NCBI RefSeq assembly: GCF_000150275.1
Contig: NW_002060958.1
Location: forward strand, 1,382,088 to 1,446,087
Origin: Trichoplax adhaerens
Taxonomy: Eukaryota > Animalia > Placozoa
DNA: 64,000 nucleotides
Reading direction: 5' to 3'
Shown here: piece after piece, positions 1-59,300 of the stretch
How the letters are laid out: the number at the start of each line of letters is the position of its first letter
Numbering within the stretch: the first letter of the stretch is position 1
Notes under the pieces: generated by a model
Database searches by the model: none
Told to the model about the DNA's origin: nothing
The model's input: the letters and a program-made list of their open reading frames with translations, nothing else
Position numbers and translations under genes: made by a program

Positions 1-1294
1 TTATCAAGTATGTTCTGTTCCTATCTAGCTATCGAAACACTGACGGCCTTAATCAGGAAGTTACCTGTAGGATAAAGCGTAAAGGTAGTACCAATAATAT
101 CGCTATAGAAACTAGTACTAGAAGGGCAGTTCAAATTTATAGCATGCTACGAGATAGAGATATCGAAGATGGGTAAAAGTTCTTAATGTTTTGTAATATC
201 TTTCTATATAATAACCTCCGATACGACGTGTACTATAGTCACAGAATCTTTAGGATTTTATGACGATTTGGAGCGTCGACAGTTTGTCTACAATTAAAAT
301 AAAAATTGTCATGATAGTTATTGTCTGTACTCCTAAATCTAACTACACTTAATGCTCTGATGGTCAGCCATGATGCATATGCGAGCTGTTCAGCAATAAT
401 GGCAGTTGCTCTATTGAAACCCTTATTTCATCGGTAAGGCGACAGTAGGGGTTTCAGTTTAAATAGCACGTAAGATATGAAAAGCACAACTTCACATAAT
501 TCTAAATAAACCGTCACTTCACTGTATACTTTATATGCTATCCAACAGGTGTATTATAGATGTAAAGTATGAGATACTATAGTCTGTAGCAGAGTTTAAT
601 AATTACCTGTATGATTAATTCAAGTATGAGAGCAGATTAAGCTCGAAATAGATTGCAATAATCTTAAAATTAAATCGTGCACAAGATTAATATTTAATTC
701 ATGCTGAAATTGATGGTTTATATTGAAATGTCAATTGTTTACCCAGGCAAGGCTAATAATGTATTTGTATGAGATAATATCAATTCAGTCGCTTTAGAGA
801 ACAAATATTTGTGCAATTATCATCGCCAGACGAAAAGGGATTGACCCACTGACTAGGTCTTATTGATTTAATCCAACAACGTTAATTTATTATATCTTCA
901 TATTTAACTTATTTTAACGACCAAACTTTATAATGAAATGACATTTAGAAAGTAGCTGTAATAAATGATCTTGTGAAATTAGAAGCATTGCCGATTACAA
1001 CTACTAGTTGCAATGCTTACTGTCTAGTTAAAACGTGTATAAGTAACTACTGAAAATTACTATTTAATTCTTTGTGTTGCAAAATATTAGGTATGGGAAT
1101 TAAAATAATTTTGACAACGTCATAGCGATGTTTCTTCAAAAATATCTGTACGAAATAGAACTTTCTTTTAATGTGATTGTAATCTTACTGCATAAATATA
1201 ATTTAAAAGGGGTACATTATTGATCAATTGTACCGTATATTGCGGTGTTAGATTTGTGTTTAAGGAATATTGTTGTTATTGAATGTGGCTCAAA

Positions 1295-1430
1295 ATGAAT
1301 TCCAAAATTAGCTTTGATCGCTTACTTACTCTATATTCGCTATGGTTTATGCCGAAATACACGATGAAATCTCAGAGAGATTAAAAAAGAATTAGCAGAT
1401 ATTCAAAATCCCACTAAGGATCGTGATTAT
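1295..1430 (+). pseudogene. Frameshifted, truncated paralog of the acidic prepropeptide exon at 3594
   Basis: atgaattccaaaattagctttgatcgct...tatgccgaaatacacgatgaaatctcagagagattaaaaaagaattagcagatattcaaaatccc aligns to 3594-3725 (MNFKL...YAAENDEIPEEIEKELADIEHP) with indels; similarity stops near 1430. Confidence 0.85.
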
Positions 1431-2299: not shown

Positions 2300-3258
2300 T
2301 AAGGGTTATATTTAAAAGCTTTTGATTAACAAATTTAACTTATGCCTAGATTGCGGTAATTCTACAACTGATTTGTCAGTTTAATAGGTATACAAGAATA
2401 AAATTTGAATAAAAAGTCTTTGTGAACAAATATAACATGCGGCAGTGAATAATTTATAGTTTATTCAACAAGTGTGCAATTAAGTTAGAGTACTTTATAC
2501 ATTTTAACAAGTAAAAATTTAACTACAGGTATGAGTTAGAAAGGGATGGCTGTAGTCTCTGAATGAAGTATGGTACTAATTCGAAATCATAGATAGAGAC
2601 GACCTATGCTTCCATCATCCATTTAAGACTTACTGGATTATCGGAGCAAAATTACTATGTTTGATTTAAGCAACGCCTCTAGATCAATTGACCTGTTTTA
2701 GCATAACAATATCAAGTCCTGTTTATAATTCGAATTTTACTTTTATTAAGGTCGAAATAATGGGTTATTAGAATTGCAAAATCATTCCAGTAAAAGAACA
2801 AACCCTACGCAGGACCACTATCCATTCAATTAACTTATCAGGCACTATGGTTTATTACTAATTAAATATAACTTAATTAGATCAATCCACTTGCCTTAGC
2901 ATAGCAGCGTCAATTTACTGCTCATTATTCGAATTTATTTTCATTAACATCGAAATAATAGGTTGCCACAATTGCAAAGCTTCTGATAAGTAAAGAATGC
3001 TTACTATAGATTACTACCGGTTCAATTGACTGATCAGACACAAAGACTTATTACTGATTGTAATGCATACAATTGCTAGATAAATGGCTGTTGGCTTGTG
3101 TTCATCCTTTGAAAACTCTTTGTCGGGATCAAAAGTTTTCACAATCTGTCTATCAAATACAATCATAGGGTAAAAAGGGTTACGTGAATTTAGCTTCTCT
3201 TAATATAACAATACTGCTGTACCGACTTTCATTCACGAACCCTTTCTTTTAATATCAA
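2300..3258 (+). repeat. Upstream part of a ~2.9-kb tandem duplication unit; second copy at ~5220-6190
   Basis: Collinear matches, e.g. aggtatgagttagaaagggatggctgtagtctc (2528) vs aggtatgaattagaaaggggtggatgtagtctc (5426), and ggatcaaaagttttcacaatct (3127) vs ggatcaaaatttttcacaatct (6059). Confidence 0.85.
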
Positions 3259-3306
3259 AAAGATAGATAAGTATAATTGCGAAATGAGGTAATATCATCA
3301 ATTTAG

Positions 3307-3415
3307 CTGATTGGTTATTTTATTAGTAATCCCGCAGGGGATATCATTAACCATAGTCTATATAAAGTCCGTTGCAGGCTTGTTATCCAGTTTTCATGTG
3401 CTGAAAATTTTCCAG
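3307..3415 (+). promoter_or_regulatory. Core promoter and short non-coding first exon of the prepropeptide gene
   Basis: Reverse CCAAT (ctgattggtt, 3307), TATATAAA (3359-3366), Inr-like ccagtt ~30 nt downstream, donor CAG|GTAAG at 3416, acceptor tgtag ending 3586 just before ATG 3594. Confidence 0.65.
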
Positions 3416-3593
3416 GTAAGTTGCTCTTACGATCATAACGATTTCTTCTACAAATTTTAAGATAACATTGAACATCGTTTACGCTGACTTTAGATAAAGA
3501 TACTTATAGAAATAGAGTTTAATAGATAACTACATTTGAAAATAGATGATTTCTCTTCTAAATATTTTATTTTCTTATTAATGTAGTAAGAAA

Positions 3594-4152
3594 ATGAATT
3601 TCAAATTGGTCTTGATTGCTTGTTTGTTGTTCGTCGCCACGGCTTATGCCGCGGAAAACGATGAAATCCCAGAGGAGATTGAAAAAGAATTAGCGGATAT
3701 TGAGCATCCCATTGAAGATCGCGAAGATGAAGAAAACGAAATCCTAGCAAAAGAAGCTGAACTTGAAAATCTGAAAGAAGATGAAATGAAAGAAAACGCA
3801 GTCAAAGCAGCGGTAAACATCTTAAAATTAACTCTACCTATTCGGACACAGTACATTATTGATTATTAGATTTGATAAACTACAAGATGAAAATTATTTG
3901 TTACTTACTAAGTTACTGATAAAATACGATCGTTTACACGCTGTTTAAACCCATTTAGAAGAATTTAAACTGTCAATTTTCAATTTTTTAACAAATTTGA
4001 ATAAGATTAGTAAAGGTTCTTAATGAAAATTTTTTCCTTTCATTTGATTTGCTGATTAGTGGTGGAGAAGACGTCGACGCCGTAGACGAAGAATTTTCCT
4101 TACCCGACGTTCGTGGTGGAACCAGCGTGTTCCAGGATATTACGGCCGTTAA
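3594..4152 (+). CDS. Secreted prepropeptide (103 aa): signal peptide, acidic pro-region, Trp/Arg-rich amidated peptide; antimicrobial-peptide-like. Exons 3594-3812 and 4060-4152
   Basis: Signal MNFKLVLIACLLFVATAYA; D/E-rich pro-region; phase-0 donor GCG|gtaaac at 3813; pyrimidine-rich tract and tag ending 4059; exon 2 reads WWRRRRRRRRRIFLTRRSWWNQRVPGYYGR*. The paralog at 6242-6785 has the same splice layout. Confidence 0.85.
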
Positions 4153-6241
4153 TCGGAAGTAATGAAACAATACTAGTCTAATCTTATAATGATGCGGGAG
4201 TTCACGTATTGAACTTTTAATGCTGTTAATGGTTACTAGAATTAAATTGTTCTATTGTAGAGCACCATTTTCATTATAGTTTTCAGTATTAGCAATACAT
4301 ATAGAGAGATTAATAAATTGCATATTCTCGAAACAACCGGCGTATATATTAATTCATGAACTAACATGATTATGTGATACAGTAAAATCGTAAAGGTAAT
4401 ATAGACGCATGATTTAGGATAAGATAATGCCTATGGATAAATAGCTACGCATGAAGGATTATTTTAAGGTCTATTCTGCTAGTGTGACCTGTGTAGTGAA
4501 TAAATGATATTAGCTATCATATTCATTATTGCCCCAAAAATGAATGAAGTTGTAATGGTAAACAAAGATCGGATAGGAAATAATAGTAGGCGTGAATAAA
4601 ATGAAATAATTATCCGAAAGGGCTCGTTAATAATAAATAGTGTTGCATGCGATTGGTAGTTCCTCGGATATAAGCTTACCTGGAAGTGTACCACCAGAAC
4701 TACCCCGTCATTAGCTTTATATGTGTTATTTATATCTATGACGATTCAATGGAGGGAGTTAAAAACGATTCAAAGTTGATAAATATGACTAAAAATAAAA
4801 TTACTGTAGTTTAGACAATAGGATTGTGTATTAGAGAATGAATGTAAATAGGATTCTTTAATGACGTCCATAGAATTACGCACAAAATTATTTATTATTT
4901 TACCCGTATGCGGAAGATAAATAACAACTTGTTGATGATTTCTTAAATCCTTACGGTATAATTATTATATTTTTTGTAGAAATGATACCGTATCTACCAG
5001 ATATAGCATACCATAATAGGCGTATATTGCTAAAAGCAAGAGGTAGAAGGAAACTAAAGTTAACTAACAGTACTGCAATTAAACCTTAAAACTTTTTACA
5101 ATAGACGCTTTGCAATTACTAGGGTAGAATTAGCTACTATGGTGTTGTTTAGCTAAGAATCACCTTGTCCTTGTATGCTGTAGCATCAAAGTTAATATTA
5201 ATAGTATGTGGTTTAATTAAGATACTTATCCTTATAATATAGTCGATATTCGTGAGATGATGAGACCTTCTAAATAGTACTAATAGAAGAAAACTAGGTC
5301 AGCAATACGATATAATTTTATGCGTAAAATTAAATAAGTGAGTCTTTGACGACAATTATAGCATATGCCAGTAATTAATTTGCAGCTTATTTAACAAGTG
5401 TTCAATAGAAGTGGAGTATTGTATAAGGTATGAATTAGAAAGGGGTGGATGTAGTCTCAGAATGAAGTTAATCTAAAATTATAGTTAGAGATGATTTATG
5501 TTTCCATTGTATATTGGAGCGTTAATGGATTCTCGAAGTGAAATTATTCCATTTGACTTAGGAACCCCATTAGATCAATCGGCATGTTTTAGCAAAACAA
5601 TATCAATGCACGGTTTATTATTCAAATGTTTCCTTTATCAAGGTCGAAATAATGGGTTACTACAATTGGAAAATCTTTTTCGTAAACGAAGAAATTTTAC
5701 GGAAGACCCCTACCGTTTCAAATAGCTGATCAGATACAATAATCTATTACTGATTAAATTCAATCAGAGACTAGTCACTTTTTTCGAGTAATCCCTGATA
5801 TAACTTAATTAGATCAATCGATTTGTTTAAGCATGGGAATGGCAAGTACAGTCTATTATTTGAATCTTACCTTATTATAGACGAAATAATAGGTTACCAC
5901 AATTGTAAAACCCTTCCATTAAATAATGGAACTCCACAGTAGGCCTCTATCGGTTCAATCGACTGATCAAACACAAAGATTGATCACTTATAATAACGTA
6001 TATAATTGCTGGATGAATGGCTGTCAACTTGTATTTATACCTTGAAAATTCGGTGTTAGGATCAAAATTTTTCACAATCTATTTATTGAATACAATCATA
6101 AGGTGAAGAGGGGCTACGTCAATTTAACCTCTGTTAGTATAACAATACTACCTTACTGTCAATTATTCGCGAATCCTTATTTTAATGCCANNNNNNNNNN
6201 NNNNNNNNNNNNNNNNNNNNNNNNNNNNNNNNNNNNNNNNT

Positions 6242-6785
6242 AAGGAATAAACGGATAGTCAAAATTCGTTAGAGGACGGTGAAGATGAAGAAGGCGAAAT
6301 CATGGATAAAAATGGAAATCTCCAAAATTTGAATGAACAAGACTTTAACTCTGAAGTACATGAATCGGCGGTATGGAAATTAAAAACTAAAATAACTATG
6401 TAAATTCGATATCTAATAGATTGTTTATAATTCAATTTTGATAAATTCTAGATGTTGTCATACCTAGCGTAGATGATTGTGGACGAGAATATAATTATTA
6501 CAGTTTACACAAGAGAGGTGTGTTAAAGTGAATTTAATTGCATTAAGAGAAGTCGACCTTAATATTTTGCATAGTTGCCATTTAGAATCTTAGAAAAATT
6601 AGAAAATCAATCGTAATTGTTTTCTTAATTGCTACAACCTTTGATAATTAAATTATAATTATAATATGCTAACAGTGGTGGAAAAGACGTAGATGATACT
6701 ATATTAGACTATGAAGAAGCTATTATCATGATGCAGAAGATCCGAAAGCTGGTAGTACAGACGTTCTAGTTCTATTGGTAAATGA
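6242..6785 (+). pseudogene. Disrupted paralog of the prepropeptide (exon ...6370 and exon from 6676); 5' part lies in the N-gap
   Basis: KE*TDSQNSLEDGEDEEGEIMDKNGNLQNLNEQDFNSEVHESA|gtatgg aligns to the pro-exon. After cag at 6675 it reads WWKRRR*YYIRL*RS..., and a shifted frame ends ...RRSSSIGK*. Multiple stops. Confidence 0.8.
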
Positions 6786-56370: not shown

Positions 56371-59300
56371 GGTGAGATAGCTTAAAATTAAGAATTGGTC
56401 AAATAAAGAAAGCGAACTTACAGCTAAAGGAAACATTTTTTTTAATCCCTGGGAACAGGTGTTGTTTCAGTTATCAACTTAATTCAAAGTTTTCTTCTTG
56501 TTATACTAATACATCAGGTTTTTATTTTTATTATATTATTACTTACGGTTCAATACTTAACTCATTTTCTTTAAAAACAGAAGGATAGTGACAATGAAGA
56601 TAGATCTATCTCGTTATATAGAAAGCCCATTCAAAATTTGTCTAGACTTGCCTATAAATTGATGTATTAGACATGCAATATTTCTCAGGAAATGCAATAA
56701 TGGAAATGCAGTATAACAATATAGTACCATCAACAAAATCTATATTACAAAGCAGAGTTATTGATAATTAAAGTTACCTAATTTTAGAAGAAAAGTTCGA
56801 AAAATAAAACCAGATTTTTATACATCAGATTGCTTGTACACGCTACATCTGTATAGTTTACTTGTTTACTTTCAAATTCTGTAGAATCAGTTATCGTAAG
56901 GCAATTAACAACTAAAAGGTTAAGCTACGACTTTGACTTTATAAGTAGACAGTTAATGATTAACCGGTATTAAAAGTTACAGAATAATAGTAGTACAGTT
57001 AAGCAAAATATCCCGAACTAGACATTTTATTAGTAAAATTAAAATTTGCCGCATCTATCTGCACTTCGCATCAGCTATTTAGTAATTAATGCCAAAGTAG
57101 CCCAAGTAATAACAAATAAATACTGTATTTCAAATTGGAACCTAATTCATATATCTCAATACTTCGCTCCAGCTTACTATTTGTTACAGCATATAATTAT
57201 AAATTATTCTATATTTCTGATTTATTCTAGAGATAAAATACCGTGATCCAATTTCGATTTCGATAAATAGTAAATAAATTGTGTTATAGCGTGGTTAACG
57301 TAGAAGCAACATTGTATTACACATTATAGATTGTTGAATCTGTAAATCATGGCTGGGTATCAATCATGCTTAAGTCTTATTCTCTTTAACGAACAATAAT
57401 ATCCAATTTGAAGGCGTTTACGCGAAACTGTACAAAGTCAAATAACAAGCATTCAGAAAAGAGAGAGAATTCAACATTCTCGGTGGATGCCGCTTGGAAG
57501 AAGTCACTGCTAATTTAGCTTATAAATTTAAGTTTCTGATACAATCATTTCATGGAACGAAAAGCAATCAAACAAACGATTTAAAGTGCTTGGGAATGGT
57601 TAGATATTGATTTTAATTAAAATATGCGAATTTTGGCTTGGATAAATCATAAGTAAAATTTATTCTGAAAGGAATCAAAAAGAAAGCAAACGACCTTTAA
57701 AAGATTTAAGCATAATACATTACGACATTCATTTTCTTACAATTATAGTAAACCGAAGCTGAGAATACTTCAGGTGGTGATATTTTTAAGGAACTGAATA
57801 ATTAAATAAAAGTGTATCGCACGAGTAAGTAGTACAAATTGACATATAGGTTTAAAGTGCCATCAAGGAATAAAGGCGTAACACTTTAACCTCTAATATA
57901 TTAATATATCGTTAATCGTACTTGACAGAGAGTACATACAAACGATGGAGCTTTTTCAGGATATTTTATTGAATCCATTTGCTGCTAAAATTGTCGATAA
58001 ACTCAATTTCTGACCTTATTGAATCAAATTGGCCCTTAAACTCTAATTTAAATAAGAGTGTTAAAAATCACTTTTCCTAGTACGTAACTATGTATTACAG
58101 GTCATAGATTTTTAGCTATTTGCCTGATGCTACCTCGTCTCTTAAATCAGCTAGCTACAGTTTTATCTAAAATTTGAATAAGATTTTAATCTGTTCCGGG
58201 CATTAATGCAAAAATATGTGTAAGCTCTTTCCTAGATTACTGATAGGCATTGATGTTAATATTCAGATAGAAAGAGTATGATAGAATACTAGAAAAAAGT
58301 ACNNNNNNNNNNNNNNNNNNNNNNNNNNNNNNNNNNNNNNNNNNNNNNNNNNNTATTCCATATAGAAACTTATTCTTCACTCTCAATTATCCCAATAGTG
58401 GATATTATTTAGTAGTAGGAATCAGTTAAATTACATATCTTAAAATTAGTGAGAATAATCTGAGAATTCTAGGCGAATATAGATAATTTTGTTAAATGAA
58501 TAAGAATTTCGCAGAAGATTCTTTAGTCCTATTATTATTCTCATCAATAATTTTTTTCTATGGCAAGGTTATTGATCAATTCACCGATTCCTCTTCTAGT
58601 ACATTTGATCGATTGCTGACCCTATGCATAAAACTGATACACAAGAAGAAATTGAAAATCAATTTAATTTACAGGAGTATTCCATCCGATCGCAAGCTAG
58701 TTAGAATTTATTCAATATACGCGTTAATCTAAGGACCGAATCGGCCTTAGAAGTGGCCGTAACATAAATATAAATATATATCCATACAGTCATGGTCAAT
58801 AAGAAATGTACAGTTACTAATATATTTTCTTCGTAGTATTATTACAATTCGCTGCTAAGTAACTTATCAACAACTTACCCATGGTAACCAGAGCATACAT
58901 ATCATAATAGATTAAAAATCTTGAATTTTAATTGAATTGATAAATTTAGAAATTCATTAGATTACGTAACTGTAAACAAGTTGTCATATAAACCAATAGT
59001 AATGATCTAATTGGGTACGTGAGCCAAATAGTTATGCTAATGGAGTAATTTTATATTCCCTGTTGTCTGCTATTCTTAAGTCAAATCATGATATATACTC
59101 CTCTAAATAATTTATATTATTATCATAATGTATCAGCAAAGACCACGTGATAGTAACTCAAATAAATAGTAAATCTATGCAAACTAATTTCCACCCGAAT
59201 GCCAAAGAGATATATATGATAACTTATACTCAAATTTTTATATTCATCCTATTCAAGTGGCAGGCTATAAACGCCCTATCACTAAGGACAGTTTCACGTG

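What the first reader, a model, noticed from the sequence alone, without database searches (positions are those of the whole stretch)
3594..4152. Hidden spliced precursor of a nona-arginine, Trp-rich, probably amidated peptide
Seen: the listed 91-aa ORF runs into an intron. Splicing 3812 to 4060 gives signal + pro-region (~23 D/E) + WWRRRRRRRRRIFLTRRSWWNQRVPGYY-GR*, with the intron exactly at the acidic/cationic boundary. Established: signal/acidic pro-piece/cationic amidated peptide is the layout of antimicrobial precursors such as Hydra arminins; terminal Gly-Arg is processed by carboxypeptidase plus PAM; Arg9 is a classic cell-penetrating motif; Trp/Arg-rich peptides (indolicidin, tritrpticin) are membrane-active. 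Inference: a natural antimicrobial, lytic or cell-penetrating peptide neutralised by its pro-region. Alternative: convertase cleavage at RR releases a signalling peptide SWWNQRVPGYY-amide.
Basis: partly seen in the sequence, partly recalled or inferred. Interest (0 to 1): 0.85.

Follow-up and report, generated by a model that had tools for sequence, protein, structure and literature searches.

The report
Known Trichoplax poly-arginine peptide precursor
This is a real, spliced and transcribed gene of the placozoan Trichoplax adhaerens for a secreted acidic-then-arginine-rich peptide precursor, but it is already annotated (TRIADDRAFT_60631) and was published in 2025 as the putative antimicrobial peptide gene "AMP3".

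Summary
Exon 3594-3812 joins exon 4060-4152 in phase 0. The product is a signal peptide, an acidic pro-piece (23 D/E, net -17), then WW-R9-IFLT-RR-SWWNQRVPGYY-GR. RNA contigs from three runs carry the 3812/4060 junction, a 5'UTR intron and a poly(A) site.

It is not hidden. Mayorova et al. 2025 (PMC12013895) call it AMP3, an arminin-like putative antimicrobial prepropeptide. They rank it among the three most expressed genes of peripheral ventral epithelial cells.

It is also a paralogue of the trichoplaxin-2 precursor (Juretic 2020, PMC7436000; WW-R13 head). The synthetic tail of that peptide kills bacteria at 0.25-2 uM.

New here:
- At least 18 family loci were modelled; those resolved put a phase-0 intron before a Trp/Arg-run exon.
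- The window holds a birth-and-death cluster of these genes.
- The 14-residue tail has 5 synonymous and 0 replacement changes against the paralogue 5 kb upstream.
- The tail is not an amphipathic helix.
- Several public models read the Arg exon in the wrong frame.

Function and mature form remain untested. This scan has already reported related family members on other DNA of this genome.

The parts
3359..3367 (+). TATA-like box (TATATAAAG)
   Evidence: Sequence. It lies about 25-35 nt before the first transcribed letters seen in the spliced RNA contig. Promoter function is inferred.
3392..3415 (+). 5'UTR exon (start approximate)
   Evidence: table 5: an X5 RNA contig joins 3415 to 3587 (GT..AG, 171 nt skipped) with 24 letters on the short side.
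3416..3586 (+). intron 1 (in the 5'UTR)
   Evidence: joint 3413->3585 with cut +2; GT at 3416-17 and AG at 3585-86.
3594..3650 (+). signal peptide, 19 codons, predicted cut after A-Y-A
   Evidence: hydrophobic core and -3/-1 Ala. This is the most conserved part of the family alignment. SignalP was not available.
3651..3812 (+). acidic pro-region, 54 codons, 23 D/E, net -17
3813..4059 (+). intron 2, phase 0, 247 nt, at the acidic/cationic boundary
   Evidence: loose ends on both sides match the other exon. The public model P0002 uses the same junction.
4060..4092 (+). Trp-Trp + nine Arg head (mixed AGA/CGT/CGA/CGC codons)
   Evidence: The motif AG|TGGTGG + six Arg-type codons occurs 4 times in the genome and 0 times in the control.
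4093..4143 (+). tail IFLT-RR-SWWNQRVPGYY
   Evidence: The first 14 residues are identical in the paralogue despite 5 synonymous changes. Helical hydrophobic moment 0.08.
4144..4152 (+). Gly-Arg-stop (amidation-type end)
   Evidence: PHM-type monooxygenase and convertase P-domain genes are present in the genome.
4153..4333 (+). 3'UTR with AATAAA at 4312-4317 and a poly(A) site near 4333
   Evidence: table 7 (A-run loose end at 4333 in X6).
1292..1426 (+). decayed relic of the signal/pro exon (no ATG, stops)
   Evidence: 76% nt identity to 3591-3724.
5855..6696 (+). decayed fourth copy: upstream flank, assembly gap 6191-6240, pro-exon piece with a stop (6251-6373), and a stub of the cationic exon at 6676-6696 (WWKRRR then stop)
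   Evidence: 5855-6186 is 75% identical to 2924-3253.

Best explanation
The locus is the Trichoplax adhaerens gene TRIADDRAFT_60631, published as AMP3. It has three exons. The transcript is abundant and encodes a 103-aa secreted prepropeptide.

Shown: the splice, the reading frame and transcription. From the literature: very high expression in peripheral ventral epithelial cells.

Inferred mechanism: after signal-peptide removal, the acidic pro-piece (-17) masks the cationic C-terminal exon (+13) during packaging. Proteolysis frees a Trp/Arg-rich peptide. There is no basic site before WW, so the first convertase-type sites lie inside the Arg run and at RR. A carboxypeptidase then removes the last Arg and PAM amidates at Gly. 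The peptide is released onto the ventral feeding and gliding surface, where it most likely acts as a host-defence (membrane-active) peptide against the biofilm microbes the animal lives on.

The gene belongs to a placozoan-only multigene family that includes the trichoplaxin-2 precursor. The family has a conserved signal/pro exon, a phase-0 intron, and a hypervariable exon that begins with Trp and an Arg run.
For: - Splice and frame.
- Identical public model.
- Published identity, arminin-like reading and cell type: PMC12013895.
- Trichoplaxin-2: the paralogue locus L003 encodes WW-R13 followed by the published trichoplaxin-2 sequence. Its pro-exon matches ours at E 1.2e-4 and 0.003. Synthetic trichoplaxin-2 has MIC 0.25-2 uM.
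- Family: 25 candidate loci. Arg-run exons lie downstream with a phase-0 AG|TGG start in the loci resolved. Alignment.
- Placozoan-only: all 24 hits among 1.84 billion representatives carry the family signal peptide.
- Selection: 5 synonymous and 0 replacement changes in the tail against the tandem paralogue, while the pro-region has pN 0.17 and pS 0.38.
- An RNA variant drops one Gly codon in frame and keeps YY-GR-stop.
- Processing enzymes are encoded in the genome.
Against: - No activity, localisation or mass-spectrometry data exist for this peptide; AMP3 itself had no FISH probe.
- Unlike trichoplaxin-2 (helical moment 0.71), the tail is not amphipathic (0.08).
- Strict conservation of the tail between paralogues is more typical of a ligand than of a fast-evolving defence peptide.
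- No cleavage site separates the pro-piece from WW, so the Arg run may be a processing site or spacer rather than part of the product.
- Similarity to the trichoplaxin-2 pro-exon is weak outside the signal peptide.
Confidence: 0.6

Rival explanations
1. Signalling peptide precursor. Convertase cleavage at RR plus amidation gives SWWNQRVPGYY-amide (SWWNQRVPV-amide from the paralogue). This would act as a paracrine signal, and the Arg run would serve only as a processing site or spacer.
For: An RR...G-R/K frame surrounds an 11- or 9-residue peptide. There are 0 replacement against 5 synonymous changes in the tail. The tail is not amphipathic. Convertase and PHM genes are present.
Against: The gene is among the three most expressed genes of the commonest ventral epithelial cell class, not of rare peptidergic cells. 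IFLT, which lies upstream of RR, is equally conserved. The peptide string and the gene number are absent from the held supplements of the placozoan neuropeptide/MS study, which is a weak negative. Only a single peptide copy is encoded per precursor.
Confidence: 0.15
2. Prey-lysis or cell-penetrating effector. The Arg9/Trp peptide would be secreted to permeabilise algae and cyanobacteria during external digestion.
For: Arg9 and Trp/Arg-rich peptides are membrane-active (established knowledge). The gene is expressed in the ventral, feeding-side epithelium. The lytic agent of Trichoplax is unidentified.
Against: Published imaging assigns lysis to lipophil-cell granules. This gene marks peripheral ventral epithelial cells, which lie outside the central digestive zone.
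Confidence: 0.1
3. Polyelectrolyte material. The acidic pro-piece and the Arg/aromatic peptide condense by charge and cation-pi contacts into dense granules, or into a secreted adhesive or mucus-binding film used for gliding and attachment.
For: The propeptide is nearly charge-balanced (net -4). Family members carry (RRR + aromatic) repeats. Peripheral ventral cells have many dark granules. Expression is very high, as is typical of material proteins.
Against: There is no direct evidence. The peptide is short, and the Gly-basic amidation end and the convertase sites point to a processed peptide.
Confidence: 0.08
4. Chance ORFs, or a different reading frame (the acidic +1 frame used by two public models), are the real product.
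For: The +1 frame of the Arg exon is open for 37 codons. It is used in TrispH2_012006 and TRIADDRAFT_64292.
Against: The RNA junction fixes the cationic frame. Differences between paralogues and between variants are synonymous in the cationic frame but change about six residues in the +1 frame.
Confidence: 0.01

Closest known systems
Ta 60631 = AMP3 of Mayorova et al. 2025 (PLoS One 20:e0311271, PMC12013895); NCBI XP_002116576.1 / EDV20932.1, UniProt B3S8R0
   Same: It is this gene. The 103-aa protein is identical and the arminin-like reading is the same.
   Different: Nothing differs in sequence. The paper gives no family analysis, no link to trichoplaxin-2, no probe and no assay for AMP3.
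Trichoplaxin-2 precursor (EST GR418172; Juretic et al. 2020, Molecules 25:3526, PMC7436000), at G000:C1378 about 35.7-36.2 kb
   Same: Same signal-peptide type, acidic pro-exon, phase-0 intron, an exon starting WW + Arg run, and a Gly-Lys end.
   Different: It has R13 against R9. Its tail is an amphipathic helix (moment 0.71 against 0.08) and is unrelated in sequence. Only trichoplaxin-2 has measured antimicrobial activity.
TRIADDRAFT_64292, the tandem paralogue 5 kb upstream
   Same: Exon 1 is 81% identical in nucleotides. The tail IFLTRRSWWNQRVP is identical.
   Different: It has R13 and ends in ...PV-GK. Its public model is in the wrong frame.
Hydra arminins
   Same: Same layout: signal, acidic pro-region, cationic C-terminal peptide with terminal Gly, and very high epithelial expression (established knowledge).
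   Different: No detectable sequence relation: the profile search returned only placozoan-type sequences. Arminins have no Trp-Trp/poly-Arg head.
Trp/Arg-rich non-helical peptides (indolicidin, tritrpticin) and Arg9 cell-penetrating peptides; engineered polyGlu-linker-Arg9 'activatable' peptides (own knowledge)
   Same: Similar composition, and the logic of masking an Arg run with an acidic stretch until proteolysis.
   Different: These are analogies only. There is no homology and no functional test here.

Membership tests
Placozoan Trp/poly-Arg prepropeptide family (trichoplaxin-2 / AMP3 type) | Signal peptide of type M-N-x-K-L-x-L-I-A-x-L-L-F | tested here: met
   M1, L5 and A9 are invariant and L12 is at least 90% conserved across 15 loci. 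Ours fits.
Placozoan Trp/poly-Arg prepropeptide family (trichoplaxin-2 / AMP3 type) | Acidic pro-region in the same exon as the signal peptide | tested here: met
   23 D/E in 54 residues, net -17.
Placozoan Trp/poly-Arg prepropeptide family (trichoplaxin-2 / AMP3 type) | Phase-0 intron at the acidic/cationic boundary, with the next exon starting at a Trp codon and an Arg run | tested here: met
   RNA support exists for this gene. Matching public spliced models exist for other members (P0005-P0007, P0014).
Placozoan Trp/poly-Arg prepropeptide family (trichoplaxin-2 / AMP3 type) | Sequence similarity of the pro-exon to the trichoplaxin-2 precursor | tested here: met
   E 1.2e-4, 42% identity over residues 1-69. 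E 0.003, strongest over the first 27 residues. The similarity is weak outside the signal peptide.
Placozoan Trp/poly-Arg prepropeptide family (trichoplaxin-2 / AMP3 type) | C-terminal Gly followed by basic residue(s) | tested here: met
   (G-R-stop); family members (GK, GKK).
Hydra arminin family | Detectable sequence homology to arminins | tested here: not met
   the profile of 15 pro-exons against 1.84 billion representatives gave 24 hits, all with the placozoan signal peptide. No arminin sequence was compared directly.
Hydra arminin family | Signal / acidic / cationic / terminal-Gly layout | tested here: met
Antimicrobial peptide (functional class) | Measured killing or growth inhibition of microbes by the mature peptide | not testable with these tools
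   Only the paralogue trichoplaxin-2 has MIC data.
Placozoan amidated neuropeptide precursors | Expression in rare peptidergic secretory cells | tested here: not met
   Literature only: a top-three gene of 'lower epithelial' metacells, equated with peripheral ventral epithelial cells.
Placozoan amidated neuropeptide precursors | Short peptide between a dibasic site and Gly-Lys/Arg | tested here: met
   RR-SWWNQRVPGYY-GR.
Arginine-rich cell-penetrating peptides | Run of at least 6-8 Arg in the released peptide, and cell uptake | not testable with these tools
   The Arg9 run is encoded. Whether it survives processing, and whether it is taken up, are unknown.

The most novel reading that the evidence does not exclude
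The Trp-Trp/poly-Arg head, kept at the start of the variable exon in the modelled loci of the family, may be a functional module in its own right. It could act as a natural protease-unmasked cell-penetrating or membrane-anchoring head, or as a polyelectrolyte partner of the acidic pro-piece. It would deliver diverse tails, here a sequence-constrained non-helical one, to microbes or prey at the placozoan feeding surface.
Probability: 0.15. Interest if true: 0.6.

Novelty: already known. Interest (0 to 1): 0.2.

Why it matters
The gene itself is not news. It is annotated, and it has been published as a putative antimicrobial peptide gene that is one of the most expressed genes of the placozoan ventral epithelium.

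Four points here go beyond the papers I read. First, AMP3 and the experimentally active trichoplaxin-2 are paralogues in one placozoan-only family with a fixed exon plan. Second, the AMP3 tail is under strict purifying selection and is not an amphipathic helix, so its mode of action may differ from trichoplaxin-2. Third, the precursor has no cleavage site before the WW-Arg head, so the mature form is open. Fourth, gene predictors often read the Arg exon in its open acidic +1 frame, so family members are mis-annotated in public proteomes.

These points matter mainly to people working on placozoan secretory cells and on peptide discovery.

Tried and rejected
- Known YYamide: the published YYamide is DYDDYYY-amide, a different peptide, so this reading is rejected.
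- Gene-ID and accession searches of papers found nothing. The gene was found under the name 'Ta 60631'.
- Pfam on the public protein and on each exon gave nothing above E 0.06, far below the curated cut-offs.
- Supplements of PMC10580291 and PMC12013895 held no occurrence of the gene number, tail strings or Arg runs. This is a weak negative, because gene names differ and the files may be cut.
The DNA of the Trichoplax sp. H2 orthologue and of P0009, a 59%-identical pro-exon from an unnamed ENA assembly, could therefore not be fetched. H2 differences were read only from the RNA-contig loose ends and the mis-framed H2 model.
- A literature search for poly-arginine plus placozoa gave nothing further.
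- I did not test whether AMP1, AMP2 and AMP4 of the 2025 paper are the long family loci found here. They exceed the length window of the word-indexed search, and I ran no further search on it.
Exons were searched by reference. Full-length proteins were used only as database ids (P0002 etc.). Joined translations were made only inside scripts, to check frame compatibility.

Full report
**Observation**

The window is AT-rich eukaryotic DNA (GC about 0.32). An ORF starts at 3594, and its first 73 codons end at 3812 directly before GTAAAC. After an AG at 4058-59, the frame from 4060 reads WW, nine Arg, IFLTRRSWWNQRVPGYY, Gly-Arg, stop.

The join is in phase 0, and the 91-aa ORF of the mechanical list simply runs on into the intron. 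The pro-piece has 23 D/E (net -17). The second coding exon has 13 Arg and 4 Trp (net +13). The nine Arg use AGA, CGT, CGA and CGC, so the run is kept at the amino-acid level and is not a DNA repeat.

**RNA evidence**

Twenty public runs from seven studies hold the stretch, three of them on record as RNA. I laid four runs on 2800-5200. All were Logan contigs, so depth is only a rough guide.

- Contigs ending at 3812 go on with 11 letters identical to 4060-4070 in X5 (certain RNA), X6 (nine contigs) and X4.
- Contigs beginning at 4060 are preceded by 14 letters identical to the end of exon 1 in X4 and X6.
- No other acceptor appears.
- Exon contigs have depths of 10^4-10^5 in X4 and X6, against about 10^2 over the intron.
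- One X5 contig joins 3415 to 3587 (GT..AG, 171 nt). This shows a 5'UTR exon downstream of a TATATAAAG box at 3359-3367.
- A contig in X6 ends in an A-run at 4333, 16 nt after AATAAA (4312-4317).
- A variant form after 4134 lacks the Gly codon of ...VPGYY in frame and swaps the two Tyr codons synonymously. It still ends Gly-Arg-stop.

**Identity**

The genome has 105,631,681 bases in 1414 contigs. Its accessions are EDV20932.1, XP_002116576.1 and UniProt B3S8R0. The precursor is therefore not hidden.

Mayorova et al. 2025 (PMC12013895) name Ta 60631 'AMP3', a third arminin-like prepropeptide. [quoted passage not shown] They equate those metacells with peripheral ventral epithelial cells, on the basis of FISH for AMP1 and AMP2. 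AMP3 itself was neither probed nor assayed.

The placozoan 'YYamide' of Varoqueaux et al. is DYDDYYY-amide, a different peptide.

**Family**

Exon 1 finds 25 candidate places in the genome. Downstream of most of them lies an exon with an Arg run.

One of them (L003, contig C1378) encodes WW, thirteen Arg and then exactly the published trichoplaxin-2 sequence. Juretic et al. 2020 (PMC7436000) took that sequence from EST GR418172, described its context as signal peptide, acidic propeptide and 13 consecutive Arg, and found it active at 0.25-2 uM as a synthetic amide. Its pro-exon matches ours at E 1.2e-4 and 0.003 (mainly the signal peptide).

I derived exon models for 18 loci.

- In the loci resolved, the acidic exon ends in phase 0.
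- The next exon mostly begins directly after AG with a Trp codon (WW, WWG, WS, W); a few begin one or two residues earlier. It continues with 4-13 Arg.
- The tails are unrelated to each other, and most end in Gly-Lys(-Lys) or Gly-Arg.
- Several public spliced models agree (P0005, P0006, P0007, P0014).
- The exact motif AG|TGGTGG plus six Arg-type codons occurs four times in the genome and never in the reversed control. The four are this gene, its upstream paralogue, the trichoplaxin-2 gene and one more.

A profile of 15 pro-exons searched against 1.84 billion representative proteins gave only 24 hits at E up to 0.001. All carry the family's signal peptide. Nothing resembling a cnidarian arminin appeared, so the arminin likeness is one of layout, not of detectable descent. 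Pfam finds nothing.

**Local cluster**

Four copies lie about 2.3-2.8 kb apart.

- The intact paralogue TRIADDRAFT_64292 lies 5 kb upstream, outside the window.
- A relic of exon 1 lies at 1292-1426, with no ATG and with stops.
- This gene is the third copy.
- A decayed copy lies at 5855-6696. Its flank is 75% identical to ours. Its pro-exon is interrupted by an assembly gap (6191-6240) and a stop. Its cationic exon has shrunk to WWKRRR-stop.

**Selection**

Against the intact paralogue, exon 1 has pS 0.38 and pN 0.16. The 14 residues IFLTRRSWWNQRVP carry five synonymous and no replacement changes. If the five changes fell at random on the 42 sites, the chance that all five are silent is about 0.001 (my own calculation from the site counts).

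The Arg run differs in length (9 against 13), and so do the ends (...PGYY-GR against ...PV-GK). The same differences change about six residues in the +1 frame. Together with the RNA junction, this shows that the public models TRIADDRAFT_64292 and TrispH2_012006, which read the acidic +1 frame, are mis-framed.

**Mechanism**

Shown: a secreted-type precursor that is spliced and transcribed. Very high expression in ventral epithelial cells comes from the literature. The gene belongs to a family with one member of proven in-vitro antimicrobial activity. The genome also encodes PHM-type monooxygenases and proprotein convertases.

Inferred: charge masking by the pro-piece (the propeptide is net -4), proteolytic release, removal of the terminal Arg, amidation at Gly, and action on microbial membranes at the ventral surface.

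Open: the mature form. There is no basic site between the pro-piece and WW, so the first convertase-type sites are inside the Arg run and at RR. The product could be the whole 28-mer, a 17-mer with a ragged Arg N-terminus, or the 11-mer.

The tail has a helical hydrophobic moment of 0.08, against 0.71 for trichoplaxin-2. If it is membrane-active, it is of the extended Trp/Arg type rather than helical. The strict conservation of the tail and the RR...GR frame keep a signalling role alive, but the cell type and expression level argue against it. Prey lysis is less likely, because lysis is assigned to lipophil cells.

**Limits**

- The RNA data were contigs, not raw reads.
- SignalP was not available.
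Exons were searched by reference, and public proteins by id.

**Verdict**

The gene and its reading are already known. The residual new points are the family link to trichoplaxin-2, the conserved exon plan, the constrained non-helical tail, the undecided mature form and the mis-framed public models. Other members of this poly-Arg family were already reported by this scan on other DNA of the same genome (s1-772801, s1-771349).

Noticed in passing
window 4049-4162 (+1 frame of the Arg exon); public proteins P0003, P0004, P0013, P0021: The +1 frame of the Arg-rich exons is open and reads as an acidic or Val/Ala-rich peptide. Several public gene models use this wrong frame or read through the intron: TRIADDRAFT_64292, TrispH2_012006 and other family members.
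   Followed up: partly
G000:C1411:2806000-2910400: A tandem array of about nine genes with the Cu2_monooxygenase (PHM/DBH-type) domain lies within 105 kb. The domain hits are split by introns. This looks like an expansion of amidating-type monooxygenases.
   Followed up: no
L012 (G000:C1411:4719026-4719900 +): A family-type signal peptide is fused in one ORF of about 300 aa to dozens of GNYQTK/ADQETK six-residue repeats.
   Followed up: no
L004 (G000:C1410:626091-626900), L025 (G000:C1411:7400896-7402500), L011: Some family genes carry two or three successive Trp/Arg-run exons, each ending in Gly-Lys. They would be multi-peptide precursors; the public model P0007 joins two such exons.
   Followed up: partly
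window 4132-4152, RNA contigs of X4, X5, X6: A transcribed variant lacks the Gly codon before YY in frame and has a diverged 3'UTR start. It matches the Trichoplax sp. H2 model, and it is also present in runs labelled organism A, so it may be an allele, a strain mix or an H2 orthologue.
   Followed up: partly
PMC12013895, results versus discussion: The paper says in one place that Hoilungia H13 and Cladtertia H23 have a gene more than 55% identical to AMP3, and in another that they express only an AMP2 orthologue. P0009, a pro-exon 59% identical to ours from an unnamed ENA assembly, may be such an orthologue.
   Followed up: no
window 6191-6240 and 58303-58353: These are assembly gaps (runs of N). 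The first cuts the decayed fourth copy of the peptide gene.
   Followed up: yes
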